This document shows positions 6,375-25,170 of a DNA stretch of 47,747 nucleotides, in pieces (positions within the stretch are counted from its first letter, which is position 1; every line of letters starts with the position of its first letter). The translations under genes and the position numbers were made by a program. Source of the stretch: Octopus bimaculoides (taxonomy: Eukaryota); contig NC_069008.1 of assembly GCF_001194135.2 (NCBI RefSeq), positions 16,438,517-16,486,263 of the forward strand. Direction: 5' to 3'. Below the pieces are notes generated by a model. The model did not search any database. It was not told the DNA's origin and saw nothing but the letters and a program-made list of their open reading frames with translations.

Positions 6375-6720
6375 TCATCATCATACGTCCGTTTTTCCAT
6401 GCTGGCATGGGTTGGACGGTTTGATTGGGAACTGGCAAGCCAGGAGGCTGCACCAGGCTCCAATCTGATCTGGCAAGGTTTCTACAGCTGGATGCCCTTC
6501 CTGACGCCAACCACTCCAAGAGTGTAGTGGGTGCTTTTTACGTGCTACCAGCATGGGAGCCAGTCAGGCAGCACTGGCATTGGCCATGTTCAGTTTGTGC
6601 TCTGTGTGTGCCACTGGCACGGAGAACCAATCAGGTAGCATTGGCATCAGCCACATTTCGGGTGGTGCTTTTAATGTCGCCAGCACAGGGAGCCAGTCAA
6701 GCACCTATGCATGAATGATA
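6375..6720 (-). mobile_element. SINE family 'A'
   Basis: catcatcatcatacgtccgtttttccatgctggcatgggttggacgg...ctacagctggatgcccttcctgacgccaaccactcc. Confidence 0.85.
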
Positions 6721-7415
6721 CTTNNNNNNNNNNNNNNNNNNNNNNNNNNNNNNNNNNNNNNNNNNNNNNNNNNNNNNNNNNNNNNNNNNNNNNNNNNNNN
6801 NNNNNNNNNNNNNNNNNNNNNNNTTCGAGCCTACGCTCTTCAGCAGAAAGGAACACAGAAAGAAACAAGGAGAAAAACAAATATAAATGTAGTGGTCAGC
6901 GATCTATGTGTATGTGTATGTGTGTTGTACACATTTTACATAATACAAGGGGTTCAAAAAGTCTCTCTACAGTGCACCCCCCACCAAGATGTACTTCAAA
7001 ACGTGTGCAGTAGAGTCAACTTATGTGCTGAACATGAAGGACAACACCTCTTATAAAGATTTTAAAAGTCTTGTAAAGTCCAATATATTCTTTCATTGTC
7101 TTTATACCAGCTTAGGGTTTTTGGCACCAGACCTGTCTTGCGTGAGTTAATTTGTGTTGACTATAATTTTTATTTTTGTTGTGCTATTAATATTGTTGTT
7201 CATTGCGTTTGCTGGTTTCCTGTAAGGGAAACATTGTTTTAAAACTGTCTGGCATTTAGTTGTGTACGGTGACCCTCCTCCACGAGGGGGGGGGGGAGGA
7301 AATATATGCAATTATTACAATTTTGAACTTTGAACTGTGGTTTTGAAAGAAAAAAAAATATATATTTGTTTAATTTTTGCGTTGATGCAAAATATGTCTT
7401 TTTCAGAAGAAATTG

Positions 7416-7461
<46 letters not shown>

Positions 7462-7463
<2 letters not shown>

Positions 7464-8233
7464 ATTTTGCCGCCGCTGTAGGCGGACAAGAACATATTGC
7501 TGTAAATATGGAAAAAATAAAGAAGTATTTTGAAATAATATCGGAAGAAAATGGGGAGAGTAAGGTTTCGTCTCCCAGCGAGGTGATTAACAATATTAAG
7601 GAACGCACTATTTCGCATAAAACATACAACACAGAGAGGAAAGCATTCGAATTTTTGGAAGAAAGTACAGTGGAAAAGTGCCTCGGGCATATTATGAAAG
7701 AAGTGAAGTATTTGGCCAGTGGCACCAAATACGCAACAGTGGAAGTCAGGTTCGAATCAATTGAGAGAGCAAGGAATCTCTCGACCCAAACCGTAACAAG
7801 TGGCAAAATAATGTTGTTGCCACTTTATCTGGGACGGAGGACGTCCCGGATAAAGATTCAATATATACCGCCAGAGGTAGATGTAGACTGTATTATTGCT
7901 ACACTACCATACAAGAGAGAGGATAAAAGCAACATAATCCAAGTAATGAGAAATGGCCAAACAAACTGGAAAGGGCAGACCCTTGAGATATTGGTGCAGG
8001 CTTCCAGCCTCCACCTAGAAGAACTACCCGAGTTCATAAATATTAACGACAAAATCATCCCAATTCACGTTGAAGGACGTAAACCCAGGGGCTTCTATTG
8101 CGGAAAGAAGGGGCACCCAAGGTTCAAATGCCTGAAAAAGAAGAAGGAAACTGAGGAACTAAATATAGAAGTGGAACCACAGGTTGAAGAGACAGTCACA
8201 CCACCAGTGACCACAGTGGCAGCATCGATGTGA
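7462..8233 (+). pseudogene. Non-LTR retrotransposon ORF1-like (Tx1/L1-type, RRM-like region plus zinc knuckle)
   Basis: Open frame ...RIKIQYIPPEVD...IPIHVEGRKPRGFYCGKKGHPRFKC, a CX2CX4HX4C knuckle with the first C changed to G. It is homologous to 11440-12056. It is preceded by a 42-nt A run, and no ORF2 follows. Confidence 0.65.
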
Positions 8234-8579
8234 ACAATAAAGATGGTGACAGATGTCCTTGCATCTGGCATGCATCACACACAGCCAGAAAATAGTTTAT
8301 AACAGAATAGCATTGATGTCAGTGCTAGGAACAACATGGTGGCACAAACGTCTACATCTGGCCCTGACCAACAATATACTGATGTATTTCAATTACTGGA
8401 TCACACTAGCATCGGTCCCAATGTGAACAATAAAGATGGTGACACATGCCCCTGCATCTGTCATGCTACACACACAGTCAGAAAATAGTTTACAACAGAA
8501 TAGCATTGATGTCAGTGCTAGGAACAACATGGTGGCACAGACGTCTACATCTGGCCCTGACCAACAATATATTGATGTA
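8225..8579 (+). repeat. Ankyrin-repeat-derived cassette, copy 1
   Basis: Units of about 95-100 nt read, across frameshifts, ...QNSIDVSARNN / LHLA / TDVFQLLDHTSIGPNVNNKDGDT. The cassette is cut at a TA by a mariner end. Confidence 0.65.
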
Positions 8580-8890
8580 TTAGGTTGTCAAGAAAGTTCT
8601 TGCGGAATTTTAAATTTTGGTTTTAAATGATGTATTTTCAAATTAATTTTCGTTAAATTCCTTTGACTTTAAATATCATTTTAAAGCCCGTTTTTCACTC
8701 TATCTAATCATGTTACTTTTTCTACTTTTTGAATAATTAGGCCATTTTTTTCCAGAACATTGAATACAACATGGACAAAAAGCAAATACGCACAATTTTC
8801 TTATTTCAGTTCAAATTAGGCTGAAAAGCTGTTGAAACAGCTCGCGATATCAACGATGCGTTTGGCCCAGGAACCACTAATGAACGTACA
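8580..8890 (+). mobile_element. Mariner 5' end: TIR plus Hsmar1/Mos1-like transposase N-terminus
   Basis: TA|ttaggttgtcaagaaagttcttgcgg is TIR-like. ATG 8771 gives MDKKQIRTIFLFQFKLG*KAVETARDINDAFGPGTTNERT, closely resembling the Hsmar1 N-terminus. Confidence 0.85.
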
Positions 8891-9100
8891 GATCACTCTT
8901 GATTTCTTTTTATTTGGCCATATCAAGGATGCTGTGTTTGCGAAGAACCCACACACACTTGATGAACTGTGTACGGATATTACTAATACTGTCCAAAATA
9001 TCCCACGAAAAGTTTTGATTAATGTGTTCCAGAACAAACGTTGTGTTGGCTAATGTCTACAACATGGTGGCCAATAATTTCAACACCTTTTGCAACCACT
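8891..9100 (+). pseudogene. C-terminal fragment of a different Tc1/mariner transposase
   Basis: ITLDFFLFGHIKDAVFAKNPHTLDELCTDITNTVQNIPRKVLINVFQNKRCVG*CLQHGGQ*FQHLL resembles the 'LDFFLWGYLK..VY...P.TL.EL...G.hFEhLL' C-termini. Confidence 0.7.
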
Positions 9101-10079
9101 TTGATGTTGTGACTTTTAAATGAGAATTTTAATAAAAGTAGGTTTGTCCATAACATTGCACATTCTTTATAACTATTAATAATCGTATTGCATTAAGCAA
9201 CAACACCACCAAGACCACTATTGGCTTGGATCTAATCTTTTGCTTTTCTCCAAATAGCAACCGAAAGAATTCTTCTCTTCCCAGCTCACAACAAGCCAGT
9301 GTTTTTTAGCTTCCTATTTCTTTCTCCCATTGACTACCACTACTTTCCAATTAGAAAGAAAGAAAAAAACTTTTTGTTGAAACACAGAAATCAGTTTTCA
9401 GAGATGATCTTTCTGAGTCACACTCAGTCAAGTCTATGACTACACTCAATGAGGGTACCATTCCTCAGCAGAGTTCAAGAAAGGTAATATTTCACTAAGT
9501 CCTTCAAACATGAAAAGCATTTTCTGTAAATGTGGCAGAATTGCAACCAACGAAAAATTAATTAAAATTACAACGACAAGCCCATTTGGTAGCAGAAACT
9601 CCTACATCATTTATAGTAGCTTGCACCTGATGTTGGAATGGTGGGGTACTGCAACAATTTGTTCAAGATGTTTGACAACAACTTTCTTTTTTCAACTGGC
9701 AGAAATGGGGCACAACACGTTTAGAAGAGACTTACAGGCTGTCTATTCGCCTGTGAAGCATTTTCACCATGTCTTCAGACAAATTTTGGATCTATTTTTT
9801 TTTTTTTAGCTGCTAGGGTTAATTTCTGTTCGAACTGACGTCATATTCAGTGTAATAATACACTTTTATAGGTTAATGAATGCCATGAAAATCATTTTCG
9901 CCATAAATCAATAAATAAAGAGTTATTAGCAACTAAAGTTTGAGAATTTTGGGTAATTTTAGCCAATTGTAACCCACAGACACATGAGAACTCTTTTTGT
10001 CTGCAAGAAAGCAAGTGCTGACAAATATATTAAAACCACTTTTTGATGCTGTGTTCTGTTGGAAATTTTACTGTTGGAT

Positions 10080-10710
10080 TATGGCAGGAAGCTCTGGTAA
10101 CCCCACCTCTATGATGGAAACACAAAGAACAGAGGAGGATAGTATGTTGTATGTACAAGAAAAGGGAGTTATACTCAAAGAAAATTATGTAAAAGGAAGA
10201 AGCATGTTGTGAACAGGTGATGCTTGAGCCAAGAAGGCAAGACCTCTGGTCTGAAGGTGGGACTCTTCTTCTTAGGGCTGTAGTGCTTTTCCTTTACTCA
10301 TTGGTTAAGGAATTGTCTTCAGTCCGGTTTTGTATAGAAGAACTCAGGATGAAATGTAGCACAGCCATTGATCATAGCAACTATGTTAGAGAAATATGTG
10401 TGGAGGACTTAGTCATTGAATTCTTGGTGGTGGTCCTGAGAAGATTGGAAACCGTTGAAACAGTCTTCTCAAGATGTAAGTACAACTGACGAAGGATCCT
10501 ACCTGGGCTCTCGGAGGAGTGTGTCGCGAGACCAGACAGGTTTTTCTGTATGTAGTGCCATGTCAGAATCATGATACACTGGAAGAATGCATACGTCACT
10601 CAATTCGAACCAACTTTCAGCAATTTGTGGAAGGTGTACTTTCACATTCCTGAAATTGATGGTTACAATTTGGAGCATAGAACGGTGAACCACAGTGTTG
10701 GCTTTGTCAA
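10080..10710 (+). pseudogene. Merlin (IS1016/IS1595-related, ISXO2-like) transposase relic, lineage 1
   Basis: Across frameshifts: TEEDSMLYVQEKG...CCEQVML...STAIDHSNYVREIC...GGPEKI..ETVFSRCKYN*R...WALGGVCRETRQVFLYVVP...SNLWKVY...EHRTVNHSVGFV. Confidence 0.8.
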
Positions 10711-11439
10711 TTCAAAGATCATATTAATGCTTAAATGCTTGTTTTCTAAGCATATCTATTTTGTAACATGTTGCTTACTGCATGAAATGCATATTGAATG
10801 CTTAAAACTAAAAAATATGTTTTGTTCAACAAAAAGTTTCTTTTTTTTTTTAAATATTTAATTCGTAATGTGCTGTTTATCACATTAAATGCTGGAAACT
10901 ACAAAAGAAGTGTTGTTTACTCGTTTTCCACATGCAGAATACAAACAGACAACACATGCTATTTTCAGGATGTTGACAAAATGTGCAGTCACGCATAAAT
11001 CAATAGCTTCCAAATCCGGTTTCCTATTTGGGTGAAAATGATCAAACTTTAAAAAAAAAAAACATTTTCCTGGAAAAAAAATGAAAGAACTCTAGCAATT
11101 TCAGTTTAGAAGACAACATTAATGTGCCAAATTTTAAAATTTTCAATAAAATTCTTGAAACCCTGGCAGCCAAACAGAAAAGATCCCAAAATTTTACTAA
11201 ATACACTAATCATTAGCCATTCATATAGGTGTAGAGACCTCATATGGCCCTGCCTGCCTGAGATTCGAAATTGAATCTAGAAATTCTCCCTAGCCATACA
11301 ACCTAATGTCCTGTCAAAAGGGAACGCTGATTAATGCATTTTCCATTTGACCCACGACATTACTAGATCATAGAATTTTTAGGTAAACAAGTGTGACATG
11401 TTGAAAGTCGGATTACCCCAGCGAAATACTCAACAGAAC

Positions 11440-12056
11440 GAAAGAATATCCAATTGTGTACAAAACATAACAGTGAAAAAAAACCCAAAACATTTTGTAC
11501 ATTTGGAAGAAAGCACAATAGGAAAGTACCTTGAGCCAGTATTACGCCAGATAAAATACCTTATCAGAGATACAAAATTTCCAGGGTTAGGGTAGAGGGG
11601 ATCCCACCCGAAATAAATGTGGCTGCTATACTTCTGGGTGACGAAGAGGAAATAGCCGTTCTCCAAACCATGCAAACAGAAACAACCAATTGGACAAACA
11701 TTGGATTTAATAATACAAAGTTCAATGGAAATCCTAGAAAAAATGGTGGAAACAATAACCCAGTTGGAGATGCGGTGTTGAGAGTCAGGGTGGAGGGTAG
11801 AATCCCTCGATGTTTCAAGTGTGGCCAAAAGGGGCACATTAGAGTGGACTGCCCTTCACCGACTGCAGGAAATCAGAAAGAAGTCAGTAAAGAACTAGAG
11901 GAAGAGGTACAAATAAACAACAACGAACTTTGGAAAGNNNNNNNNNNGAACGGGACCCCCCCCCCCATCAATACCTTCTCAGCCCCAGCCTCTTCCCCGC
12001 AGACACCAAACCCATTGGGTAAAAGTGGGGGAAAAAAAAAGAAAAGGCACTGACAC
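11440..12056 (+). pseudogene. Second Tx1/L1-type ORF1-like relic with an intact zinc knuckle
   Basis: HLEESTIGKYL...IKYLIRDTKF / RVRVEGIPPEINV...RVRVEGRIPRCFKCGQKGHIRVDC. It is homologous to 7462-8233 with an internal deletion and a frameshift. Confidence 0.7.
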
Positions 12057-12454
12057 ACAGGAACCCACAAACTGACCCACTCTCCCCCACTGAATGTTGT
12101 TTTGCATGCATGAGGTTTGAAGGCGTAGATATAGAACTAATCAACAAAACAGCGAAATGGAAGAACACAAGGTTCGTTAATATGGAAGGAAAGCCAAATA
12201 TTGAGGGGTGGCCACAAATGTGTTTTGGTGTCAGAGAGGCAAAAGAATGAGATAGAAAAGCATAAAGGTGGGTCCAAGTGGTTGGAGAGTGAACTTTGAT
12301 ATGAAAGGGTTGCCGGAAAATGGGGAGTATGAGGAACTTGTAAGGGAAATATGGAGTGGATATTTTGGAAGGGATGGAATTCAAAGGAAAAAGGAAGTGA
12401 AGCTACACAGAGGTGGGCCGAGTAGCTTTATTTCCATACGCCGTCCTGTGAATC

Positions 12455-12660
12455 ACTAACATCAATGTCGAGCACAATAAATATGGTGACACAAAACATT
12501 ATACGTGAATTTGATTGGGGAGATGCAGGCTAGTTAAACAACTGCTGTCTAAACCAGATGTCAATGTGAGGAATACGAAGAAAGAGGAGACACACCTGTA
12601 CACCAGGCCTTGGTTATGAATCCACAGGTGTGTAACGCAGTAACACTGATATCAATGAGT
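12455..12660 (+). pseudogene. Divergent ankyrin-repeat fragment
   Basis: TNINVEHNKYGDT...LVKQLLSKPDVNVRNTKK / RGDTPVHQALV is a near-canonical ankyrin G-x-T-P-x-H motif. Confidence 0.65.
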
Positions 12661-13319
12661 AATGATATACAGGGTGGCCCAAAACTTTGCACCCGACCTT
12701 TAGCCTGAATACACAGACATAGTTCAACTACTGTAAAATACTCGCATCAAGAACAATATGTATAATAGCAGAAACCTCTCTTAAGGATTGTTACCATGTA
12801 AGAGAGCTCAAGTCCACGGTTGGAGTCATGTTGGGGAGATGCAACCATGCCAAATTCATCTCTCCACTCTGGACAAAATAAAAGTAACCCCACCCTCCCA
12901 AGAAGAAATGTTGGCAGTGGGAGACCTCGCTGAAACTTGGGCAACACAACGAGGTTGCTTTGGGAGCATAGACTCCGCTGTGTTTATGGGTACTAACATA
13001 TAGTGCCAAGCCTGTGTCTGGCAGGTGCTATCCTGTTCATTTCTTGGCCAATGCATTTGGAAAGGACCAAGCAGATCCTATCTGGCTCCGTTGGTGTTAT
13101 CTTAGGAATGCATGGCAGCTGCACATTGATGCAACTTTGCTGAGTAGGGGCACTTATGCAAACATTGAAGCTGTATAACAAGGTCTTCACCCGGGAGAAT
13201 CTTTTGAGTGTAAGCTTCCCCAACCTCGCCCAGAGGTCGACCTCGTGCTTCTGGCTGCCCTTCTCATACGATTGTTCACCCTGGATGAAGAGAACTCAAT
13301 GGCACAAGAATCCAGCTTC

Positions 13320-14230
13320 GATTAGGAATACACAGATGCATTTCAATTACTGGATCACACTAGCATCGATCCCAATGTGAGGAATAAAGATGGTGATACA
13401 CACCACTACATCTGGCCAGCATTATGGATACCCAGATAAAATTACAAACATTACAACATAAATCACAAGTTCACAAGTCTAAAATAAAATGGAATGAAAA
13501 TTTGAGGAATAAAGATGGTAACACATGTCCCTGCATATGGCATGCATCACACGTGCCCAGAAATAGTTGAAGAGCTATAACAGAATAGCATTGATGTCAG
13601 TGTGAGGAATAATAAAGATGGTGACAGATGTCCTTGCATCTGGCATGCATCACACACAGCCAGAAAATAGTTTATAACAGAATAGCATTGATGTCAGTGC
13701 TCGGAACAACATGGTGGCACAAACGTTTACATCTGGCCCTGACCAACAATATACTGATGTATTTCAATTACTGGATCACACTAGCATCAATCCCAATGTG
13801 AACAATAAAGATAGTGACACATGTCACTGCATCTGGTATAACCAGACATGTCCCAATGTGAAGAATAAAGATGGTGGCACAGACCACTACATCTGGCTTG
13901 CAAAATGGATATCCAGACATAGTAAAAGAGCTTTCAGTTCCAAACAGAAAAGATATATCTCCAGAGGGAACCACAGCCTCAACAAAGTACATCACATCAA
14001 GTTAGGGAGTCTAAAATATGTTCCCCAACTGATGTATTTCAATTACTGGATCACACTAGCATCGATCCCAATGCAAGGAATAAACAAGGTGACACACACC
14101 ACTACATCTGGCCAGCAAAATGGATATCCAGACATAGTTGAAGAGCCCTCAGTAAAACACTGAAAAGTTGGATTTCCAGATAGAATTACAAACATTACAA
14201 TGTAAATCACAAGTTTGCAAGTCTAAAATA
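13320..14230 (+). repeat. Ankyrin-repeat-derived cassette, largest copy
   Basis: Repeated aataaagatggtg...catctggc units. atggtg(13711) to atagtg(13811) spans 100 nt. Translates piecewise as DVFQLLDHTSINPNVNNKD, PLHLA and NGYPDIVEE. Confidence 0.7.
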
Positions 14231-14334
14231 AAACGGTACTTAATGATGGTCTATAGATTTTACCCCTAGCCGAGCATTTATTTGAAGTTTTAACCAAACC
14301 ATTAATCAAGGTATTGATTCAGAATGTTTTTATG

Positions 14335-14480
14335 GTGTTAGGAAGGGCATCCAGCTGTAGAAACTCTGCCAGATCAGATTGGAGCCTGGTGTAGCCATCT
14401 GGTTTCACCAGTCCTCAGTCAAACCGTCCAACCCATGCTAGCATGGAAAGCGGACGTTAAGCTATGATGATGATGATGAA
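14335..14480 (+). mobile_element. SINE family 'A' 3' part (an inverted partial copy follows at 14680-14765)
   Basis: ttaggaagggcatccagctgtagaaactctgcc...gcggacgttaagctatgatgatgatg. Confidence 0.85.
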
Positions 14481-14767
14481 CCTGCAACCAAATTGTTTTC
14501 CTCATTCCTCTTTCTTCAAAAATTTAACTGTTCCTGACCCCTTTTTTTTTTGTGCTTTTCTGTTTGTTTGAATTCTTGAACTTTTTATTACCGTTTTAAC
14601 ATTCTCGGAAGATGGATTACTCCGGACTACAAAGGGCAAAAAATGTAACTGACAAAAATTTTGTTAATTATTATCATCATCATCATCGTCGTTTAACGTC
14701 CGCTTTCCATGCTAGCATGGGTTGGACGATTTGACCGAGGACTGGTGCAACCGGATGGCTACACCAG

Positions 14768-15300
14768 AATTATCTGAACGAAAATCAACTTATTGCTAAT
14801 CAGAAACAGTGTACATGCGGGAATGATATGGATATAAGGCCCTTGCGGCGTGCAACAGGCAGGATCCAATGGCGATGCAGAAACTGCTGGGTAAGAGTCT
14901 CCATCTGAAAGAACACATTTTTGGAAATGAGTAAACTTTCTGTTTTTATTAAATATTGCATCTTATTTTCGACTTCATTTTCGAAATGCCGGTAATTAGT
15001 TCTATGTGTGTGAACAATTTAAGTAAAGTCATAGCAATACAATGGTATGAATATTACTGTGAAATCTGTTTGCAGAAGCTAATGAAAGACACAAAGTGAT
15101 TGGGTGGCCCGAATCATGTCGTAGTAGATGAAAGTTTGAGGTTTCATAATAAAAATGAAGTAGAGCACGGTGCAGTTGTTCTGGGTTGTTTGTTTCTATG
15201 ACAACAGCCATAAAAAAGGTTATTTGCAACACATTCAAGATGGAAAAGCAGAGCCTCTGGAGACATTCATCATAGAAAACAGAAGCAGGCTCTGCAATAT
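14768..15300 (+). pseudogene. Merlin transposase relic, lineage 2 (keeps the N-terminal Zn ribbon)
   Basis: NQKQCTCGNDM...WRCRNCWVRVSI*KNTFLEMSKLS / ILHLIFDFIFE...AIQWYEYYCEIC...LGGPNHVVVDESL / WVVCFYDNSHKKGYLQHIQDGKAEPLETFIIEN. Confidence 0.8.
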
Positions 15301-15539
15301 TTACAGACCAGGAGGGTGGTTACCAGAAGACCTGGCTCCATCCATGGAACTGTCGGCCAATCTCAGAATTTTGTGGACCCAGAAAGTAGCGTATGTACAA
15401 ATAGAGTAGAGTTAAAAGACTAACGTCTTTCCTTAATTCTACAGACTGTCGTCTTCTCCATTCGTCTGCAGTATTTCCTGCCTTCTTTCTGTCAGCACAA
15501 ACATTTATTTCTCTTCCCAAGAGAACAGCGTTGTCCTAT

Positions 15540-15725
15540 GTTTCACTTTTTCGCCATAATGTTTCAAGACATTAAGCCTGAAGGCGACTTAAGCCAGACG
15601 AAAATTGCACACATTCAACATGGGGAACCAACAACAAACAAAATCCTAAAGAAGCTAGCTGAGAATTACCAATCTGACAACGCTCAGCAATTTTAAAGAA
15701 ATATTGCACACAATTTGTCATAGAA
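15540..15725 (+). pseudogene. Possible MULE/Mutator-like transposase C-terminal scrap
   Basis: FFAIMFQDIKPEGDLSQTKIAHIQHGE...LKKLAENYQSDNAQQF*RNIAHNLS* resembles the '...L..IAHNL' C-termini of animal MULE-type transposases. This is a short match recognised by eye. Confidence 0.45.
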
Positions 15726-15879
15726 TTTCCTTCGATTATACGGTATTAAACTTATCTTATCTACACTATAAATATTAACTTTACCTGAGCGTTTGTTTCG
15801 TAGAATGACCAAGAAGAGGTTCAATTCTCACATCCAAACTGAAAAGGTAGTTGTAAATAAGACTATGAATAGTATGACT

Positions 15880-16325
15880 ATCAGAGAAGTAAGAAATATG
15901 GTCACCCACAGCAATATCTGTGGCTTTGGGCATCAAGACAGGACTTGGTTAAAAGTGCTACAACAAACCAGCATTCATGAAAATTTGAGGAATAAAGTTG
16001 GTGACACATGTCCCTGCATCTGCCATGCATCACACATGCCCAGAAATAGTTGAAGAGCTACAACAAAATAGCATTGACGTCAGTGCGAGGAATAATAAAG
16101 ATAGTGACACATGTCACTGCATCTGGTAGAACCAGACATGTCCCAATGCGAAGAATAAAGATGGTGGCACAGACCACTACATCTGGCTCGCAAAATGGAT
16201 ATCCAGACATAGTAAAAGAGCTTTCAGTAAAAGACTGAAAATTTCATCCAATATTTGCTGAGGTCAGCAGACATAGTTAAATAGCTACAACATGCGAATA
16301 GGAAATATGGTCGCCCATGCCAACA
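15880..16325 (+). repeat. Ankyrin-repeat-derived cassette
   Basis: Same units as 13320-14230 (…QNGYPDIVKELSVKD), running up to the Merlin junction. Confidence 0.65.
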
Positions 16326-16935
16326 AGTCAAAGTTGTCATTGCAGAAAATATTTCACAGCGTCTTTCATTTCGTGTTTGAGGCACCTATATCTACTTCGG
16401 CTTTATATTCCGGAGTAGATAATAAAACTGCGATCCAGTGGTATGAGTTATGTCGAAAAGTGTGTTCGGGGAAGATGCTTCGAGACAAAGCTTCGCTCAG
16501 TGGTCCAAGTCATGAGGTGGAAAAAGAGGAGAGTTTGTACTTTAAAAGGAAGAGCCACGTAGAGAGAATAGGCCATCAAACGTGGGTTGTCGGGTGCTAT
16601 GACCCCACTGTGAAAAAAGGGTTCCTTCAACGTGTACCCGATAGAAGCGCAGCAACACTTGAAGCAGTTATAATTGAAAATGTGTTACCGGGTACTATAG
16701 TACATACTGACAAATGGGGCAGCTATAGGAATCCACAACAGAGTTAACCACTCAACGAATTTCATCGACCCTGAAACTGGCGCTTGCACGAATCACATGG
16801 AGGCCTATTGGTCCCAAATTAAAAGACGGCTGAAGTATGTGACTGGATCAACGGGCGACATGAAATGGTCCTGCGTCGATGAGTCAATGTATCGAGAAAT
16901 GCATGGATTTACTGTGAAAAAAAACTTTGAGAATG
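16326..16935 (+). pseudogene. Merlin transposase relic, lineage 3 copy a (5'-truncated, 20-nt deletion)
   Basis: Nearly identical to 20211-20872 but lacks ctgggttacatacacaaaac, which causes a frameshift after RNPQQ. The 3' end is replaced by ankyrin repeats. Confidence 0.9.
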
Positions 16936-17345
16936 TGCGAGGAATAATAAAGATGGTGACACATGCCCCTGCATCTGGCATGCTACACACACAGCCAGAA
17001 AATAGTTTATAACAGAATAGCATTGATGTCAGGGCTAGGAACAACATGGTGACACAAACGTCTACATCTGGCATGTATCACCAATATACTGATGCATTTC
17101 AATTACTGGATCACACTAGCATCAATCCCAATGTGAAGAATAAAGATGGTGACATGTCACTGCATCTGGTATGCATCTCGCATAACCAGACATGTCTGAA
17201 TGTGAAGAATAAAGATGGTGGCACAGACCACTACATCTGGCTCGCAAAATGGATATCCAGACATAGTAAAAGAGCTTTCAGTAAAAGACTGAAAATTTCA
17301 TCCAATATTTGCTCAGGTCAGTAGACATAGTTAAGAAGCTACACA
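16936..17345 (+). repeat. Ankyrin-repeat-derived cassette
   Basis: Same aataaagatggtgacacat...catctggc units as the other copies. Confidence 0.65.
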
Positions 17346-18136
17346 ATGATTTTATAAAAAAATTTTTAATTACTGTAATCTTTATATCGATTTTAAGCTA
17401 CTTCACCTTTGTTTGTCTATCCTTGTTCGTCCCCTCTTTGTAACGCCTATAAATGGCGAATTTTTAATGAAATAAAGTAGCTTGCTTCATTTGTATAATA
17501 ATTATTTGTGCAGCATTGTTTCCAGAGTTGGGGGTGTATCTGCCCGAAGATTTTTGGAAGCTATTTTGGATTGTATCTGTTGGCCTGGAGTACCTGCTGG
17601 GTGAAAATTGTTGTCTTTGCTGTGGAACTGGTTTTTTTACCTCTCTTTCTATTTACTAATTTTATTTTTGAACTGTCTTAATATTTTTTTTCTCATCAGC
17701 TGTGTCTTCAGCTGATTTTTGTGACCTTTTTGTTGAACTCTATAACATGGCAAAAAGAAACAACGAAACCGCTGCCTTGGAGTGGGAGGTTGTCCCACCC
17801 AAGCAGGGACTAGCAGAGACAGAGAAGAGGACAGTGGTCTTGTGGACCTATTCTAGAGAATGTTAGAGCTCAAGAAAGGACAAAAATTCCATTGGAAACA
17901 ATTCAAACTTACTGCGAGTCCATACCATAAACATTATTAAANNNNNNNNNNAAAAAAAAAAAAAAAAGGAGTGATTTTCATTTGATGCAGAAAGAAAGTT
18001 GCTGACATGAGAGAGGAATGAATCCCAGACGTGTGTGTGTGTGTGTGAATGTATGTATTTCAAAGAGGAATACTCAGCCACTTACACATAAATTTCACTG
18101 TGTAGCTAATTCAATAGATTACACCACTGAATGCTC

Positions 18137-18375
18137 ATAGTTTTAATTCGAGGAATCCCCTTAATTCCGCCAGATCTTCCTTTTAATTTCAAAAGATATC
18201 AGTTTCTAGCAACATCACTAAGTCCCAAGAACAATGATTGAAAGTAACTGGGCTTCATCTGATGGAACACTGCTTTTCTCACAGCTAGCTCTATGTTGGT
18301 TGCTCAAGGGTTGGGTATAGAAATAAGCTATCTGAGCCGACCCAGAATGGAAAGACCAAAAATGTTCCCTTTCAA
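18137..18375 (+). pseudogene. Helitron RepHel (Pif1-like helicase) C-terminal fragment
   Basis: IVLIRGIPLIPPDLPFNFKRYQF / KSQEQ*LKVTGLHLMEHCFSHS*LYVGCSRVG matches the Helitron motif IPRIPL..DLPF.FKRLQFP...KSQGQ.L...GL.L...CFSHGQLYVA.SRVG. Confidence 0.8.
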
Positions 18376-18504
18376 TCATTTATTGTTGGTCACGTGATAT
18401 GTCACAAAATGATATTATGTATAAATTGTTCTATAAAAAGTAGAACTACGATCATAGATAGAAGTAATTTCTGCTGAGAAATACGTGATGTTTGACTCAA
18501 ACAA

Positions 18505-18830
18505 AATCCAGTGCAAATCGGCGGCATTGATGCTAACGGACAACCTGTAGTTGTGGAGATGGATGAGAGTAAATATCACCGTGGTGAGTGGGTGCCCTGG
18601 CCATTGGGTCCTCGGCGGAATAGAGAAAGCGTTTCTAAGAAATGTTTCTCAGTGGAAGTACTTGAGTGTTCTGAGCAGACTCTGACAGCATTAATTCAAT
18701 GTTGGATTCTGCCAGGAAGTCTCACAGTGAGTGATGGTTGGCGATCATACCATAATATTGGAATTTTAAACGGTGATGCATACACTCACGAGTTGATTGC
18801 TCATGAAGAACATTTTGTTGATCCTGAGGT
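18505..18830 (+). pseudogene. Merlin transposase relic, lineage 4
   Basis: IGGIDANGQPVVVEMDESKY-HRG...SVEVLECSEQTLTALIQCWILPGSLTVSDGWRSY...YTHELIAHEEHFVDP retains the first two catalytic Asp motifs (DES, SD.W). Confidence 0.85.
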
Positions 18831-19749
18831 GTAAGGCATAGAGGAGCAGAGGCCAGTGGAAAATATGGAAGAAAGAGAGTGGTGAAGAGAAAGAAAAGAC
18901 AAGAAAATGCAGACTCACTACCAAGGAGTCCCATGAAGGAAAGAGAAAGGAAGTGTAGAGGAGACACAAGGTGTACTAGAAGGAGGAAAAGCAAACGAGC
19001 AGAAAAGAAAGGAGATGTCAGCAAAATTAAGCGAGAAAGACGAAGAGAGAAAAACAGAGAGCGATACCAGTAATTAGTACGGGGGAGACAGTAAAAGGAC
19101 AGGACAAAAAGGAAGATAGAAGAGAAATGACAACATCGAATGAGAGAAAAGCAGAGAAGAACGAGATGGAAGTAACAGCAGAAGAGATTAGTGATGGAAA
19201 TTAGAAAGTAACACTGAAGGGAAAACAAGAAAGAACTATGGTACAGTGCAGAAAGAAATGTGGAGATTGAAAAAAAAGATCACGAAAATGAAAAATGTAA
19301 TTAGGGTGAAGTTAGCGCCTAAATTGTACAATGAAGGATTTAAAGCAGTCTTGTTTGTAAAAGAGAAAGGTGAAAAGCTGAAGGAAATGACAGATATCAA
19401 CCTCACAGTTTTGATTTAATGAGTGGCCACCAGTGGTGGCATTTGAGGTCACAGTGGAATATCTGATACAAAGGAAAATAAGTGGAATATTTAAAATTTG
19501 AATTATTAGTGACTCCACAAAAAATTAAAAAAAGATACAAAATAGAATATTGAACCGAAAAGTTAAATGATATATATAAAACAGTAAAATGAAACTGCCT
19601 GCTCGTGGGAAACAGGAAAGTTGTTTCATCTCATTTATTACTTATTCATAATTTCATCCATTATATGTTTCGTGTACCTCACTGTATTGTTTTGTAGTGT
19701 CCCCTCTATATTATGGCCGCAGTGCCGAATAAAGAAATTAGCTATTGTA

Positions 19750-20210
19750 TTACAACAAACTAGCATTGATATGTGAGGAATAAAGATGGTTACATGTGTT
19801 ACTGAGTGTGGCATGCATCAGACATGCCCAGAAATAGTTGAAGAGCTACAACAAAATAGCATTGATGTCAGTGCGAGGAATAATAAAGATAGTGACACAT
19901 GTCAATGCATCTGGCATGCTACACACACAGCCAGAAAATAGTTTATAACAGAATAGCATTGATGTCAGTGCGAGGAATAATAAAGATAGTGACACATGTC
20001 ACTGCATCTGGTATAACCAGACATGTCCCAATGTGAAGAATAAAGATGGTGGCACAGACCACTACATCTGGCTCGCAAAATGGATATCCAGACATAGTAA
20101 AAGATCTTTCAGTAAAAGACTGAAAATTTCATCCAATATTTGCTGAGGTCAGCAGACATAGTTAAATAGCTACAACATGCGAATAGGAAATATGGTCGCC
20201 CATGCCAACA
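19750..20210 (+). repeat. Ankyrin-repeat-derived cassette (duplicated together with the adjacent Merlin)
   Basis: Near-identical to about 15990-16325. Confidence 0.65.
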
Positions 20211-20872
20211 AGTCAAAGTTGTCATTGCAGAAAATATTTCACAGAGTCTTTCATTTCGTGTTCGAGGCACCTATATCTACTTTGGCTTTATATTCCGGAG
20301 TAGATAATAAAACTGCGATCCAGTGGTATGAGTTATGTCGAAAAGTGTGTTCGGGGAAGATGCTTCGAGACAAAGCTTTGCTCAGTGGTCCAAGTCATGA
20401 GGTGGAAAAAGAGGAGAGTTTGTACTTTAAAAGGAAGAGCCACGTAGGGAGAATAGGCCATCAAACGTGGGTTGTCGGGTGCTATGACCCCACTGTGAAA
20501 AAAGGGTTCCTTCAACGTGTACCTGATAGAAGCGCAGCAACACTTGAAGCAGTTATAATTGAATATGTGTTACCGGGTACTATAGTACATACTGACAAAT
20601 GGGGCAGCTATAGGAATCCACAACAGCTGGGTTACATACACAAAACAGTTAACCACTCAACGAATTTCGTCAACCCTGAAACCGGCGCTTGCACGAATCA
20701 CATGGAGGCCTATTGGTCCCAAATTAAAAGACGGCTGAAGTATGTGACTGGATCAACGGGCGACATGAAATGGTCCTGCGTCGATGAGTCAATGTATCGA
20801 GAAATGTATGGATTTACTGTGAAGGAAAACTTTGAGAATTTCGATACATTTCTGACATGTGAAAATTTCTAA
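20211..20872 (+). pseudogene. Merlin transposase, lineage 3 copy b (open frame, 5'-truncated, first catalytic Asp lost)
   Basis: SKLSL...AIQWYELCRKVC...GPSHEVEKEES...WVVGCYD...VPDRSAATL...PGTIVHTDKWGSY...HKTVNHSTNFVNPETGACTNHMEAYWS is a classic ISXO2-like DDE fold, but with EKEES in place of E(I/V)DES. Confidence 0.92.
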
Positions 20873-20994
20873 GACTCTCAACTCTTTTCCTTTGCAAACA
20901 TCTTATCACTTTCAGTAGTAGACTGTAGTGAAACCTCTCTCTTGGGTATTTATTTACAAATGATAACGTAGCGGCTAACATCTAGCTTTCGGTC

Positions 20995-21222
20995 GATTGG
21001 ATTGCTGTGTCCGTCACCCTGATTGGCTCTTATTTGCGCAGCATTTGTCAACAGGGTGCATATCAACCAATCGTGGCCTTCTGTTAATGTCACGTGAGAG
21101 AGAGTTCTCTGCTGTTTTCCTGAGCCCCCTTTTTATCTATAAATAGCCCTGCTTCATCCACGCCAGTTGGCCACGACTTTAGACTTCTCACAGAACACAG
21201 CTCCAGCCAGTTTCCAGCAATG
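20995..21222 (+). promoter_or_regulatory. Pol II-type promoter signature
   Basis: ATTGG at about 20996 and 21024, CCAAT at about 21068, E-box CACGTG at 21091, TATAAATA at 21138, initiator-like CAGT with A at 21165 (27 nt from the TATA), and ATG at 21220. Confidence 0.5.
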
Positions 21223-21542
21223 ACGTCAACACCACCAGCAGAGTACACGTTAACAACAGCAACCGTGGTTCTGTCTCAACACAGTTTGTGTGGATTGTTT
21301 CCACCACGAAGTCAACAGCCAGATACATGCGAGGATCTTCTGCACCAAGTAACCGGTCACAGCATCGACGCTCAACTTTACACACAACATGTGATACCTC
21401 AGCTCTGCTATTTGGCCACGACCTCTTGCGTATGGACATTCTACCTACTGTGTAACTCTTCTATGAACTGGTACTCTCTAATCTTTTTGTTCAGGACTCA
21501 TAGTCTGTTACAGACTTATTCCAGGTTTTGTATTTCTCACTC

Positions 21543-21739
21543 ACACCGGGCGAAATGCTTAGCGGTATTTCGTCTGCCCGCTACGTTCTGAGTTCAAATT
21601 CCGCCGAGGTCGACTTTGCCTATCATCCTTTCGGGGTCGATTAAATAAGTACCAGTTACGCACTGGGGTCGATATAATCGATTTAATCCGTTTGTCTGTC
21701 CCCTCCGTGTGTAGCCCCTTGTGGGTAGTAAAGAAATAA
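21543..21739 (+). mobile_element. SINE family 'B', 5'-truncated
   Basis: ccgggcgaaatgcttagcggtatttcgtctgcc...gagttcaaattccgccgaggtcgactttgcc...agccccttgtgggtagtaaagaaata. Confidence 0.9.
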
Positions 21740-21749
21740 CACACACATA

Positions 21750-22494
21750 TTGTATACATACTGTTGTTCATACGAAGATTTCGAACATAACATACCAGTA
21801 ACTAGAGATGAAGGTAAACTAAAAAACATTATACAATGGAGAAAAGTTCCAACTGAATCATTTCAATTTAACAATAATGTAAAAGTAACAACAACAGAAC
21901 AAGAATTAAATGCAGAAGAATTAATGAGTCTTTACAATACGGGTAGATGGAAAATGTTACGCGCAGATGACACTTGGGAATACACTTGGGTAAATCGTAC
22001 ACCAAGTTGGTTTAATGCATCTGACTTCGATGCACTGGCTGGTCACATTACATACGGAGAAATAGGAAATGATGCAGAAATAGCTTGTGAAATAAATGCA
22101 TTTCAAAACAATACAGAAAAATTGGGTCCCAGAAAAAGTAGCTAACAGAACTACATGGAATGATATGTTAAATGAAACTAAAGTACCAAGTAGATCTATA
22201 TTAACTCAAATGCCAATTAATCCTTCAAATCCACCTCCTATAGCAGCACTAGATCCAATACCTTTATTAGACGCAAAAAACAACGCAGCAAAAGTAAACT
22301 TCTTATCAATAGACTATTTTAGTGAAATAGACTTTGAAAAACCAAGCGGTTCACCACAATTTACTGGTTACTTACCAAGAATTCCTGCAGCAACTAAAAC
22401 ATGTCCACTTAATCCCGAAAATAAAATGAATTTATGTCAATGGCCACAAGGTCTTAGAACATACCCCAGCACTACTTTTCCTGCAATGCGTTAA
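21750..22494 (+). pseudogene. Parvovirus-like capsid (VP) C-terminal two-thirds, one frameshift near 22135
   Basis: WKMLRADDTWEYTW resembles the parvoviral '(M/L)RTGD..f.w' motif. PPPIAALDPIPLLDAKNNAAKVNFLSIDYFSEIDFE resembles the terminal jelly-roll strands of small invertebrate parvovirus capsids. The two ORFs are joined across an A5 run. Confidence 0.55.
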
Positions 22495-23801
22495 TATTAT
22501 ATTTTATTCTATTACAGCAAAATCAAGAACATTTATATACAGCTATATATCCATGGTTATCATCAGAACAATTTCATTGGCATTCAGATCTAGAATTACC
22601 TACAGACAACATTTCTGAAATACATACAAACGAAAACGATATAAATCAAGACGATGCAGACGTACGCAATGCAAAAAGATTATTACGATTCATAAACAAC
22701 AGACAAGCAATTGTCATTTTTCATAGAGCTGAAGATATGATGGACAGAAACAAATACTGGAATACAATAAACCACTTCCATATCCTATGGAAATGCAAAT
22801 CAGAGAGAAGTTCAGCAAATGACAGTACTTGGCAAAAAATTACACAAGAATACTGGAAAGCAACTGGATACACATAAAATACCAAACACACAAAGAGTAA
22901 AATTTCCAGCTGCATTAGCAAACTACTTTTGCAAACCTCCAAAAGTTTTCTTATTAAAAACATTATGTCCAGCAATTCAAGAGTTAAATATATGGTGTAA
23001 TGAAGAATATTCATACACAGATAAAACTTCCACTATACAACAACCATCTATCTCTTTCGAACAACCAACTTTCGTCAATTCCAATGGGAAATCAATGAAA
23101 CTCTCCAGCTACATCAAATACTTATATGGCTCAAAAAGAATATGCTAATTTCGAAGAAATGAAACAATGAAAATTTTTTAGGTGCTCTAGCTCATCCAAT
23201 GTTTGATACCATAGCTAAAAAAGTTGCAGAAGCTTCAAAAATGGAAACTTTAGCCACATGTTTCATTAAAAAATATCAAAACATGAAATGGAACAAATTT
23301 CATATTCATCAGTACCATACAGTATCAACTAGTCTCCGTATTTTCGAAAACCTTCTAAAAATTCAAACCATAGATATCAGTAATTTCGTCAACAACATAT
23401 GGAATATTTTAGCTCAAAAAATTCCGAAAATAAATACTTTCGCACTAGAAGGTGTACCAAGTTCCGGAAAAAGTTACATAGCAAGAAGTAACTCTGCAAT
23501 GTTCAGATATTCAGAAACAATACAAGGAACATCAAGTTTCCCTTCCCAAGACATGTATGAAACAGAACTTTGCCTTTTCGAAGAACCAAACACGACACTC
23601 AAAACTCTTCAAACATTCAAGTTAACAGAAGGAGCCGACACTGCTGTCGCTGTAAAGTTTAAACCTAGTGTTACAATAAAAAGAACACCAATAATAATTA
23701 CCAGTAATTATCCTTTCGATACTTTAGCACCAACTGACGAAAAAGAAGCTTTCAAACAACGTATTGTTTATATTGCCGCATGCACACACACACACAGCTG
23801 A
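22440..23801 (+). pseudogene. Parvovirus NS1-like replication protein: HUH endonuclease plus SF3 helicase (about 450 codons, 1 stop and about 3 frameshifts)
   Basis: HUH motif HFHILW at 22773-22790; catalytic YxxK-type NYFCKPPK at 22921-22944; Walker A GVPSSGKS at 23451-23474; Walker B LCLFEEP; B' motif EG..TAVAVKFK; motif C PIIITSN; FKQR. Confidence 0.9.
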
Positions 23802-24113
23802 CTACCTAATAAACTCACTCTCTATATATAACTAACAGTTGTCTCACTCTCTCTTATCCTGCAGGCACTTGTTCGCATCTCACATGCGAGCCCTCTTATG
23901 TTATATTATAGGTTTTGTGTCGACCGTGCGACTCATTTGAATAAAAAAAAAAAATCAAAGGACCTGTACATGTAGAGTAGATGAGCTAGCAGAGAAGTCA
24001 AGGAAATATACCAAGACAGAAGATCAGATGAGAGAGATAAAGTATGGTGAATGTAGTAGAGTAGTGGTTCCCAACCTGGGGTCCACGAGCTAAATTCAAA
24101 ATTTCATACATAC

Positions 24114-24116
<3 letters not shown>

Positions 24117-24161
<45 letters not shown>

Positions 24162-24305
24162 ATATATATATATATGTAATCAATATGTGTATACAAGTAT
24201 ATATGTGTGTGTATGTATATATATATGTATGTATATATACATGTATGTGTATGTATATATATATGTAATCAATATATGTGTATACAAGTATATATATGTG
24301 TATAT
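24117..24305. repeat. (TG)n/(TA)n compound microsatellite
   Basis: Seen directly in the sequence. Confidence 0.95.

Positions 24306-25134: not shown

Positions 25135-25170
<36 letters not shown>

What the first reader, a model, noticed from the sequence alone, without database searches (positions are those of the whole stretch)
7300..24000. About 17 kb of unrelated TE and viral coding relics all on one strand, a flamenco-like uni-strand piRNA cluster candidate
Seen: two Tx1-like ORF1s, two Tc1/mariner pieces, five Merlin relics (four lineages), MULE-like and Helitron scraps, ankyrin cassettes and the parvoviral EVE are all encoded on +. I found no minus-strand coding relic in this interval, whereas LINE relics at 29.3 and 37.3 kb are on minus. 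Established: uni-strand piRNA clusters accumulate short, co-oriented TE fragments and EVEs antisense to their transcription. Inference: this block may be a host anti-TE/antiviral memory locus transcribed leftward. Caveat: recognition by eye is biased toward the displayed strand.
Basis: partly seen in the sequence, partly recalled or inferred. Interest (0 to 1): 0.75.

Follow-up and report, generated by a model that had tools for sequence, protein, structure and literature searches.

The report
One-strand nest of dead octopus transposons
A 16.7-kb stretch of an Octopus bimaculoides chromosome holds about ten dead mobile-element genes and one virus-derived helicase gene that all point the same way; this is real, but partly due to local duplication, and it cannot be shown from sequence alone to be a small-RNA defence locus.

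Summary
The window is Octopus bimaculoides chromosome CM046628.1, 16,438,517-16,486,263, in the same orientation as the record. The block lies just downstream of a minus-strand C2H2 zinc-finger gene.

An equal-handed scan of both strands confirms the core observation. Every coding relic I could recognise at 7.3-24 kb is on the + strand:
- five Merlin (IS1595-type DDE) relics of four lineages;
- two RRM-RRM-CCHC ORF1-like genes plus one scrap;
- one mariner HTH stub;
- one NS1/Rep-type SF3 helicase.

The minus strand gave only noise.

Several details failed. The 'ankyrin cassettes' have no significant ankyrin similarity; they are a local direct DNA repeat. The MULE and Helitron scraps, the second mariner piece and the minus-strand LINE relics in the flank could not be verified. 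Two Merlin copies are a 93% direct duplication, so the relics are not all independent.

Roughly nine independent co-oriented events give P of about 0.004 for this window. That is unremarkable across a 2.7-Gb repeat-rich genome. The A>T skew is confined to the recognised relics, so there is no block-wide strand signature.

The piRNA-cluster reading needs small-RNA or stranded transcript data and cannot be judged here. My estimates: an ordinary TE/EVE nest about 0.5, a uni-strand piRNA source about 0.25.

The parts
7300..24000 (+). The block: a nest of mobile-element coding relics and one viral helicase relic. All recognisable ones are sense on +. It corresponds to CM046628.1:16,445,816-16,462,516.
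7420..7461 (+). A run of 42 A immediately upstream of ORF1-like gene 1.
7463..8230 (+). ORF1-like gene 1. The predicted fold is two tandem RRM domains followed by a CCHC knuckle. It has a 299-codon stop-free frame. It belongs to a multicopy octopod family.
   Evidence: AlphaFold2 model with pLDDT 90. Foldseek hits to tandem-RRM proteins.
8228..8581 (.). Cassette repeat copy 1 (193-bp unit, 1.8 copies).
   Evidence: No Ank hit.
8777..8890 (+). Mariner-type HTH_48 stub. A possible transposase C-terminal end up to about 9050 rests on reading by eye only.
   Evidence: E 4.5e-7. One search found no PDB support for the C-terminal piece.
10319..10717 (+). Merlin relic D, a distant lineage. It is broken by at least 2 frame changes and at least 2 stops.
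11437..12260 (+). ORF1-like gene 2, with a CCHC knuckle. It is 31% identical to gene 1. It is broken by several frame changes and stops, and it holds the assembly gap 11938-11947.
13327..14230 (.). Cassette repeat copy 2, direct relative to all other copies.
14333..14767 (.). MITE-like element with inverted arms (14333-14479 and 14665-14767). The same family occurs in both orientations in the flanks.
14768..15579 (+). Merlin relic B, a separate lineage about 30-40% identical in protein to lineage A. It is broken by at least 3 frame changes and several stops.
15953..16289 (.). Cassette repeat copy 3, part of the duplicated unit.
16136..17021 (+). Merlin relic A1. It has 1 frame change and is cut short at its 3' side by a cassette.
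16935..17343 (.). Cassette repeat copy 4.
17747..17857 (+). ORF1-like scrap of 37 aa, matching the N-terminal end of one relative.
17942..17951 (.). Assembly gap 2. Nothing bridges it except a gene model that treats it as intron.
18298..18864 (+). Merlin relic C, a separate lineage. It has no frame change and up to 2 stops.
18864..19750 (.). Purine-rich low-complexity tract on +. It explains the 185-aa minus-strand open frame as a compositional artefact.
19751..20174 (.). Cassette repeat copy 5.
20012..20869 (+). Merlin relic A2. It has a 231-codon open frame with no internal break. It lacks about 50-70 N-terminal residues found in relatives. It is the 93% direct duplicate of A1.
21542..21739 (.). 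Interspersed repeat copy, inverted relative to its four copies in the flanks.
21740..23798 (+). Candidate full extent of the viral relic. It is a series of overlapping + open frames in more than one frame. Only the last part is verified. If the part just upstream of the helicase is the NS1 N-terminal region, the gene carries at least 2 frame changes.
   Evidence: No Pfam or PDB hit for the upstream frames. The HUH-like and Y-x-x-K motifs were seen by eye only.
23163..23798 (+). NS1/Rep-type SF3 helicase domain. It is a 212-codon stop-free frame with Walker A, Walker B and motif C readable.
   Evidence: Parvo_NS1 1.3e-10, PPV_E1_C 7.1e-11. (AAV Rep40/68, E1, NS1). (annotated 189-aa gene model 23199-25496).
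25512..27254 (-). Neighbour: an intact 580-aa C2H2 zinc-finger gene. Its 3' end faces the block, so it is the only annotated possible source of minus-strand transcription into the block.

Best explanation
The block is an intergenic nest of dead mobile-element genes plus one endogenous viral helicase relic. It lies in a repeat-rich C2H2 zinc-finger gene neighbourhood of Octopus bimaculoides.

SHOWN.
- Identity and + orientation of four Merlin lineages (five copies), three RRM-RRM-CCHC ORF1-like relics, one mariner HTH stub and one NS1/Rep-type SF3 helicase.
- No recognisable minus-strand relic.
- A local repeat ('cassette') present five times, always direct.
- A 1-kb cassette-plus-Merlin unit duplicated in direct orientation at 93% identity.

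INFERRED.
- The uniform orientation arose from chance among roughly six to nine independent insertions, reinforced by tandem-type (direct) local duplication.
- The relics are decaying neutrally. Most carry stops and frame changes.
- The block needs no dedicated function.

It may still feed small-RNA production, as many TE-rich regions do. Nothing in the sequence requires that.
For: - Identities and strands.
- Direct-only internal repeats within the block, with a single inverted pair from a MITE.
- Decay: all relics except Merlin A2, ORF1-like 1 and the helicase domain have frame changes and/or stops.
- No block-wide compositional asymmetry. AT skew is 0.181 in recognised relics and 0.002 in the 6.3 kb of unassigned sequence.
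- Non-coding repeats occur in both orientations.
- No gene is annotated across window 15.5-23.2 kb in the chromosome-level record.
- Window-level P is about 0.004 for 9 of 9. At about 57,000 windows of this size per genome, that is an expected occurrence (inference).
Against: - Nine of nine co-oriented relics is still unlikely for a single window.
- Four distinct Merlin lineages within 10.5 kb is an unexplained concentration.
- Three relics keep long open frames: the helicase (212 codons), Merlin A2 (231) and ORF1-like 1 (299). These are either young or not fully neutral.
- The block's position immediately downstream of a minus-strand gene fits a read-through transcript that would be antisense to every relic.
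- Recognition is limited to families with Pfam models or fetched relatives, so minus-strand relics of unmodelled families could be missed.
Confidence: 0.5

Rival explanations
1. Uni-strand piRNA source locus. A long minus-strand precursor starts at, or reads through from, the C2H2 zinc-finger gene at 25512-27254. It runs leftward through the block. Being antisense to every relic, it is processed into piRNAs against Merlin, mariner and LINE-like elements and against a parvo-like virus.
For: - All recognisable relics are sense on +, and so antisense to a leftward transcript.
- The relics are fragments of several unrelated families plus an EVE, as in known clusters.
- The only annotated minus-strand gene abuts the block on its upstream side for leftward transcription.
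- Molluscs, including O. bimaculoides, have abundant somatic and germline piRNA loci: about 5,700 small-RNA loci on this assembly (PMC12479628; PMC6128900).
Against: - No small-RNA or transcript evidence is available here.
- The block is short (16.7 kb) and ends at the left without any marker.
- There is no strand asymmetry in the unassigned sequence.
- Part of the co-orientation is duplication.
- Non-coding repeats are not co-oriented.
- Gene models in two annotations run on +, not -. They may be purely ab initio.
- The prior that any one TE-rich block is a uni-strand cluster is a few per cent.
Confidence: 0.25
2. An orientation filter imposed by a host transcription unit, without piRNA production. 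The block lies inside a long 3' extension of the minus-strand zinc-finger gene, or inside an unannotated minus-strand gene. Insertions in sense to that transcript were removed by selection because they bring splice and polyadenylation signals. Only antisense (+) insertions persisted.
For: - The minus-strand gene lies directly to the right, with its 3' end facing the block.
- Antisense bias of TEs inside transcription units is well established in animals (own knowledge).
- Co-orientation of independent lineages.
Against: - No minus-strand exon or gene model spans the block.
- No zinc-finger or other host domain was found on the minus strand of the block.
- Known intronic antisense bias is modest, roughly 55-65%, and would rarely give nine of nine (own knowledge).
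- A 17-kb 3' extension would be unusual.
Confidence: 0.12
3. A plus-strand transcription unit or co-opted genes. Some relics (the helicase frame, Merlin A2, ORF1-like 1) are expressed from + as host genes or chimeric transcripts, and this keeps their frames open.
For: - A 189-aa gene model with Parvo_NS1 domains at 23199-25496 on +.
- A UniRef O. bimaculoides model of 353 aa, spliced over 16292-18831 on +.
- Long open frames with the helicase motifs readable.
Against: - The 353-aa model joins two different Merlin lineages and a cassette piece. That looks like an annotation artefact.
- Most relics are broken.
- No expression or conservation data are available here.
Confidence: 0.08
4. Assembly artefact. 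The three contigs between the gaps are wrongly ordered or oriented, or collapsed repeats create the apparent duplications.
For: - Two 10-N gaps lie inside the block and twelve in the window.
- Continuity across both gaps in the block is unproven.
Against: - Each contig on its own shows only + relics (4, 3 and 2-3). Random misorientation would break a uniform pattern, not make one.
- The duplicated copies differ by 7%, so they are not a collapse artefact.
Confidence: 0.03

Closest known systems
flamenco and other uni-strand piRNA clusters of Drosophila (own knowledge; cited as CR99 in PMC12479628)
   Same: TE fragments of several families are packed together and point one way. A single flanking gene or promoter side could drive an antisense transcript.
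   Different: - flamenco spans hundreds of kb and is dominated by antisense LTR/ERV fragments. This block is 16.7 kb of DNA-transposon, LINE-ORF1-like and viral relics.
- flamenco has a mapped promoter and precursor, and its small RNAs are demonstrated. None of that is available here.
EVE-bearing piRNA clusters of Aedes mosquitoes (own knowledge)
   Same: A viral relic is embedded among TE fragments in the same orientation.
   Different: - The mosquito EVEs come mostly from RNA viruses, and piRNAs are mapped to them.
- Here the relic is one SF3 helicase of a small DNA virus type, with no small-RNA data.
Ordinary TE nests in repeat-rich zinc-finger gene neighbourhoods (octopus ZNF expansion; bioRxiv 10.1101/2022.11.29.518450)
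   Same: A repeat-rich intergenic stretch between tandem C2H2 genes, with decayed fragments and local duplications.
   Different: Complete co-orientation of all recognisable coding relics is not a general property of such nests.
Merlin superfamily of DNA transposons, related to bacterial IS1016/IS1595 (own knowledge; Pfam PF12762)
   Same: The DDE_Tnp_IS1595 domain is present. Relatives exist in Octopus, flatworms, nematodes and ticks.
   Different: All five copies here are truncated or broken. No terminal inverted repeats were identified.
Parvoviridae-derived endogenous viral elements (own knowledge)
   Same: An SF3 helicase matches Parvo_NS1 and AAV Rep40/68.
   Different: - The match to papillomavirus E1 helicase is equally strong, so the family assignment is not exclusive.
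- No capsid or verified nuclease part was found.
- No relative was found in the viral contig collection.

Membership tests
Uni-strand (flamenco-like) piRNA cluster | Abundant 24-32-nt, 1U-biased small RNAs mapping almost only to one strand. | not testable with these tools
   No small-RNA data are held here. Libraries on this assembly exist (PMC12479628), but no locus table is held.
Uni-strand (flamenco-like) piRNA cluster | A long single-strand precursor transcript from a promoter at one end. | not testable with these tools
   There is only positional plausibility: the minus-strand zinc-finger gene abuts the right end.
Uni-strand (flamenco-like) piRNA cluster | TE fragments predominantly in one orientation. 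| tested here: met
   All recognisable coding relics are on + and none on -. Caveats: local duplicates and non-coding repeats in both orientations.
Uni-strand (flamenco-like) piRNA cluster | Extended size (tens to hundreds of kb) and a position conserved between related species. | tested here: inconclusive
   The block is 16.7 kb and the co-orientation does not extend into either flank. Synteny could not be examined.
Merlin / IS1595-type DDE transposon | DDE_Tnp_IS1595 transposase domain. | tested here: met
   Pfam E 3.1e-15 and 3.6e-5. Four segments matched. 24 relatives were found.
Merlin / IS1595-type DDE transposon | Terminal inverted repeats and target-site duplication. | not tested
   All copies are truncated and their ends abut other repeats.
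   AlphaFold2 model with pLDDT 90. Foldseek best hits are tandem-RRM proteins at E about 1e-4. The CCHC knuckle appears.
   No RVT or endonuclease domain was found on either strand of the block. None was found in ten longer family members either. The clade is therefore unassigned.
Tc1/mariner | Mariner HTH DNA-binding domain and DD(D/E) catalytic domain. | tested here: inconclusive
   HTH_48 is present. No catalytic-domain hit was found, and the supposed C-terminal piece is not supported.
Parvoviridae NS1/Rep-derived EVE | SF3 helicase with Walker A, Walker B and motif C. | tested here: met
   Parvo_NS1 1.3e-10. AAV Rep40/68 and NS1 chains. The motifs are readable in the frame.
Parvoviridae NS1/Rep-derived EVE | HUH nuclease domain and capsid gene of parvoviral type. 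| tested here: inconclusive
   The upstream + frames have no Pfam or PDB match. The HUH-like motif was seen by eye only. The E1 helicase model scores equally well.
Ankyrin repeat | Significant match to the 33-residue ankyrin repeat. | tested here: not met
   There is no Ank family hit in any frame and no ankyrin chain in the PDB search. An ankyrin-like reading needs a frame change in every unit.

The most novel reading that the evidence does not exclude
A cephalopod uni-strand small-RNA source that is fed by read-through from a C2H2 zinc-finger gene. It would store, in antisense, fragments of four Merlin lineages, LINE-like ORF1 genes, a mariner and a parvo-like Rep helicase. That would make it a compact flamenco-type 'memory' locus in a mollusc, physically coupled to the zinc-finger repression system.
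Probability: 0.2. Interest if true: 0.6.

Novelty: new member of a known kind. Interest (0 to 1): 0.35.

Why it matters
If small RNAs do come from the minus strand here, this would be a concrete, compact uni-strand cluster in a cephalopod. It would hold a DNA-virus relic and sit next to a zinc-finger gene. Three things would then become testable by description alone:
- whether flamenco-type architecture exists outside arthropods and vertebrates;
- whether such a locus records viral encounters;
- whether the two TE-control systems (piRNA and zinc-finger) are linked in octopus.

If not, the locus is an ordinary TE nest. Its value is then practical: two public gene models here are stitched from dead transposon and viral pieces.

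Tried and rejected
- A 4,780-aa package of + segments gave no hit at all. The word filter failed on the packaged query, because single ORFs from it did find relatives later. One of three searches was lost this way.
- The Pfam member counts for the flanks were swamped by zinc-finger families and say nothing about TEs there. Targeted flank ORFs gave no TE domain on either strand.
- Look-ups of the Merlin ORF, P0001 and P0002 for gene context on the left side found nothing on record. So gene calls are known only for window 15.5-37.3 kb.
- The viral-contig scan with the helicase found no relative.
- PDB sequence searches of ORF1-like 1, the upstream viral-block frames, a cassette frame and the mariner C-terminal piece gave nothing significant.
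- PDB searches of all six frames of the unassigned stretches gave nothing on either strand.
- The Helitron idea was tested through P0150, a chimeric relative that carries Helitron_like_N and PIF1 domains. Only its ORF1-like and low-complexity part matches the window. Rejected.
- No tRNA-like SINE heads or Rfam families were found that could have given an orientation tally for non-coding elements.
- Literature searches for cephalopod parvoviral EVEs found nothing.
- A block-wide transcription-type skew was considered and rejected, because the skew is confined to the coding relics.

Full report
WHERE THE WINDOW COMES FROM

The 580-aa open frame at 25512-27254 (-) is recorded in GCA_001194135.2, Octopus bimaculoides chromosome CM046628.1. 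The fetched locus is the exact reverse complement of window 15512-37254. So the window is co-linear with the record, and window position w equals record position w + 16,438,516. The window has 38.7% G+C and twelve N gaps.

The right flank is a cluster of tandem-finger C2H2 genes on both strands. In the record's gene calls for window 15.5-37.3 kb there are only two genes. One is the zinc-finger gene. The other is a 189-aa model with Parvo_NS1/PPV_E1_C domains, spanning 23199-25496 on +.

CHECKING THE OBSERVATION WITHOUT STRAND BIAS

Three kinds of Pfam scan were run:
- all six reading frames of 7201-21200, translated straight through with stops marked X;
- the long open frames of 21.1-23.8 kb on both strands;
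- every stop-free segment of at least 36 aa, scanned one by one: 120 on + (alignment A1) and 137 on - (A2).

The plus strand gave:
- DDE_Tnp_IS1595 in four segments (best E 1.5e-16);
- Parvo_NS1 and PPV_E1_C in one segment (about 1e-10);
- HTH_48 of Mos1 transposase at 8777-8890 (4.5e-7);
- a CCHC knuckle at 11808-11858 (1.6e-5).

The minus strand gave six unrelated families with E between 0.007 and 0.039. That is the number expected by chance from 137 segments at a threshold of 0.05.

I then fetched 24 Merlin-type proteins and 150 relatives of the first ORF1-like gene (profile search), and ran tblastn against the whole window. Inside the block every match is on +:
- Merlin relics at 10319-10717, 14768-15579, 16136-17021, 18298-18864 and 20012-20869;
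- ORF1-like relics at 7463-8230, 11437-12260 and 17747-17857.

These two libraries were seeded from + frames. They are therefore sensitive but not unbiased in the choice of family. The Pfam scans are the unbiased part.

WHAT THE PIECES ARE

Merlin. The five Merlin relics fall into four lineages.
- The copies at 16.1-17.0 and 20.0-20.9 kb belong together. DNA 15953-16934 and 19841-20839 are 93% identical and direct.
- The other three share only about 28-40% protein identity with that lineage, and match other relatives better.

ORF1-like genes.
- The two larger genes are homologous to each other (31% identity, E 5e-14).
- The family has 403 representatives at E<=0.001. Named members come from O. 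bimaculoides, O. vulgaris, O. sinensis and Argonauta hians.
- Pfam recognises only the CCHC knuckle.
- An AlphaFold2 model built on 43 sequences has mean pLDDT 90. Its best structural matches are tandem-RRM proteins such as U2AF65, IMP3 RRM12, nucleolin RBD12 and hnRNP A1 UP1.
- Two RRMs plus a CCHC knuckle is the architecture of one class of LINE ORF1 proteins (own knowledge). This supports 'LINE ORF1-like'.
- No reverse transcriptase or endonuclease lies nearby or in ten longer family members, so 'Tx1' is not established.

Viral relic.
- The viral relic is verified only for the SF3 helicase domain at 23163-23798. It is a 212-codon stop-free frame with Walker A, Walker B and motif C readable. 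It matches AAV Rep40/68, parvoviral NS1 and papillomavirus E1 chains.
- The E1 and NS1 Pfam models score equally, so 'parvoviral' is the likeliest assignment but not the only one.
- The + frames between 21740 and the helicase have no Pfam or PDB match. An HUH-like motif and a Y-x-x-K motif can be read by eye. If that part is the N-terminal half of the same gene, the gene carries at least two frame changes.

- Merlin A2: no internal break, but N-terminally truncated.
- Merlin A1: one frame change, and a truncation.
- Merlin B: at least three frame changes and several stops.
- Merlin C: no frame change and up to two stops.
- Merlin D: at least two frame changes and at least two stops.
- ORF1-like 1: a 299-codon open frame.
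- ORF1-like 2: several frame changes and stops, plus an assembly gap.

WHAT DID NOT HOLD UP

The 'ankyrin cassettes' are a DNA repeat at 8228-8581, 13327-14230, 15953-16289, 16935-17343 and 19751-20174. Every copy is direct, at 77-96% identity, with a 193-bp tandem unit in the first copy. No frame of any copy reaches significance against the Pfam ankyrin families or against ankyrin structures. An ankyrin-like reading needs a frame change in every unit. They are best called a local repeat of possibly ankyrin-derived origin.

The other unverified items:
- MULE and Helitron scraps and a second Tc1/mariner piece found no support. This includes six-frame searches of the 3.8 kb of unassigned sequence against all PDB chains on both strands, and a test with a chimeric Helitron-bearing relative.
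One frame at 37.3 kb looks like a zinc-finger remnant.

With my methods, then, the flanks hold no recognisable TE coding relic on either strand. The contrast between block and flank is 'relics versus none', not 'plus versus minus'.

THE GAPS

Gap 11938-11947 sits in the tail of ORF1-like gene 2. 87 of 90 protein matches end before it. The three that cross it do so through a K/E-rich low-complexity stretch, and one of them aligns in two frames. Neither continuity nor frame across this gap is established.

Gap 17942-17951 has an ORF1-like scrap on its left and an A16 run starting at its right edge. Nothing bridges it except a gene model that treats it as intron.

Each of the three contigs holds only + relics, so no conclusion depends on reading through a gap. 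The relative orientation of the contigs does rest on the scaffolding.

IS IT MORE THAN CHANCE?

I counted the duplicate once and left out the cassettes. That leaves about nine separate events: three ORF1-like, one mariner, four Merlin lineages and one helicase. All nine on one strand has a two-sided probability of 2 x 0.5^9, about 0.004.

That is notable for one window. A 2.7-Gb genome holds about 57,000 such windows and is about half repeats (own knowledge). Chance alone should therefore produce this pattern many times.

Two independent checks:
- Long open frames are asymmetric: 15 against 8 at 100 aa or more.
- AT skew is +0.116 in the block against +0.006 in the flanks (1-kb bins, Mann-Whitney P = 3e-4). 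The skew is 0.181 in the recognised relics and 0.002 in the remaining 6.3 kb once the purine-rich tract at 18864-19750 is set aside. So the skew merely restates that A-rich coding strands face one way. There is no separate block-wide signature of the kind that sustained one-strand transcription might leave.

Inside the block all internal DNA repeats are direct, except one MITE-like inverted pair. This points to tandem-type duplication as one source of co-orientation. Repeats shared with the flanks are not co-oriented.

HOW IT MOST LIKELY WORKS

My best reading (about 0.5) is an ordinary, mostly decaying TE and EVE nest in a zinc-finger gene neighbourhood. Its uniform orientation would come from chance plus direct local duplication.

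The only annotated minus-strand gene, the zinc-finger gene at 25512-27254, ends facing the block. Read-through, or a long 3' extension, would yield a transcript antisense to every relic. Processing of that transcript into piRNAs is plausible in a mollusc with abundant piRNA loci. I give it about 0.25.

The same transcript without piRNA processing would act as an orientation filter on insertions (about 0.12). Plus-strand co-option of the open frames (about 0.08) and assembly error (about 0.03) complete the list.

One thing remains unexplained under every reading: the concentration of four Merlin lineages in 10.5 kb, each lying close to a cassette copy.

COMPARISON WITH WHAT IS KNOWN

The block shares the one-way packing of mixed TE fragments with flamenco-type clusters, and the embedded viral relic with mosquito EVE clusters. 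It differs in size and in content: DNA transposons and LINE-like ORF1 rather than LTR elements. It also lacks every functional datum. Membership in that class cannot be claimed, because only one of four defining features could be tested.

The Merlin relics meet their domain criterion, as does the helicase relic. The ORF1-like genes meet the architectural criterion but not the linkage to ORF2. The ankyrin label fails.

VERDICT

The interpretation cannot be judged from sequence. Interest is moderate to low unless small-RNA mapping, which is feasible with existing public data, shows minus-strand piRNAs.

Noticed in passing
window 2085-2396 (+): A 104-aa open frame matches the CLN6 family (Pfam PF15156, E 3.4e-6, profile positions 106-176 of 280). 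It may be an exon or a pseudogene fragment of a host gene on the plus strand left of the block. No other CLN6 part was looked for.
   Followed up: no
window 23163-25496 (+): The viral helicase frame is stop-free for 212 codons with Walker A, Walker B and motif C readable. The chromosome-level record annotates it as the first exon of a spliced 189-aa gene that ends 16 bases from the stop of the convergent zinc-finger gene. It is either a young insertion or kept open by selection.
   Followed up: partly
window 16292-18831 (+): A UniRef O. bimaculoides protein of 353 aa ('ISXO2-like transposase domain-containing protein', P0002) is a spliced model. It joins Merlin lineage A, a cassette piece and Merlin lineage C across an assembly gap. 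It is probably an annotation artefact built from dead elements.
   Followed up: partly
window 38394-40061 and 43505-45501: An inverted duplication of about 1.4-1.7 kb at 78-81% identity carries a C2H2 gene and its flank, so two zinc-finger genes face each other. A further direct copy lies at 46908-47390.
   Followed up: no
window 7420-7461: A run of 42 A ends two bases before the first residue at which relatives of ORF1-like gene 1 begin to align. It could be the tail of an upstream retroposed element or part of the element's own leader.
   Followed up: no
window 18864-19750: A purine-rich tract (60.6% purine, GC skew +0.23, in the 2-kb bin 18001-20000) reads as K/E/R-rich in the plus frames. 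It produces a spurious 185-aa open frame on the minus strand.
   Followed up: partly
window 2468-2640, 4455-4663, 5138-5309, 6370-6620, 14333-14767, 36439-36695: A MITE-like repeat family of about 150-250 bp is present in both orientations. The copy inside the block has two inverted arms about 190 bp apart.
   Followed up: no
window 24117-24308 and 25138-25214: Between the block and the zinc-finger gene lie a compound (TG)n/(TA)n microsatellite and a 77-base tract, 92% A, that contains an assembly gap (25171-25180).
   Followed up: no
window 45547-45878 and 47437-47747: A direct repeat at 89% identity. On the minus strand it matches residues 192-266 of one chimeric relative (P0079), outside that protein's ORF1-like part. 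It is an unidentified repeat.
   Followed up: no
window 10319-20869: Four different Merlin lineages lie within 10.5 kb, most of them next to a copy of the cassette repeat. The protein search with one of them returned only about ten O. bimaculoides relatives. This local concentration is unexplained.
   Followed up: partly
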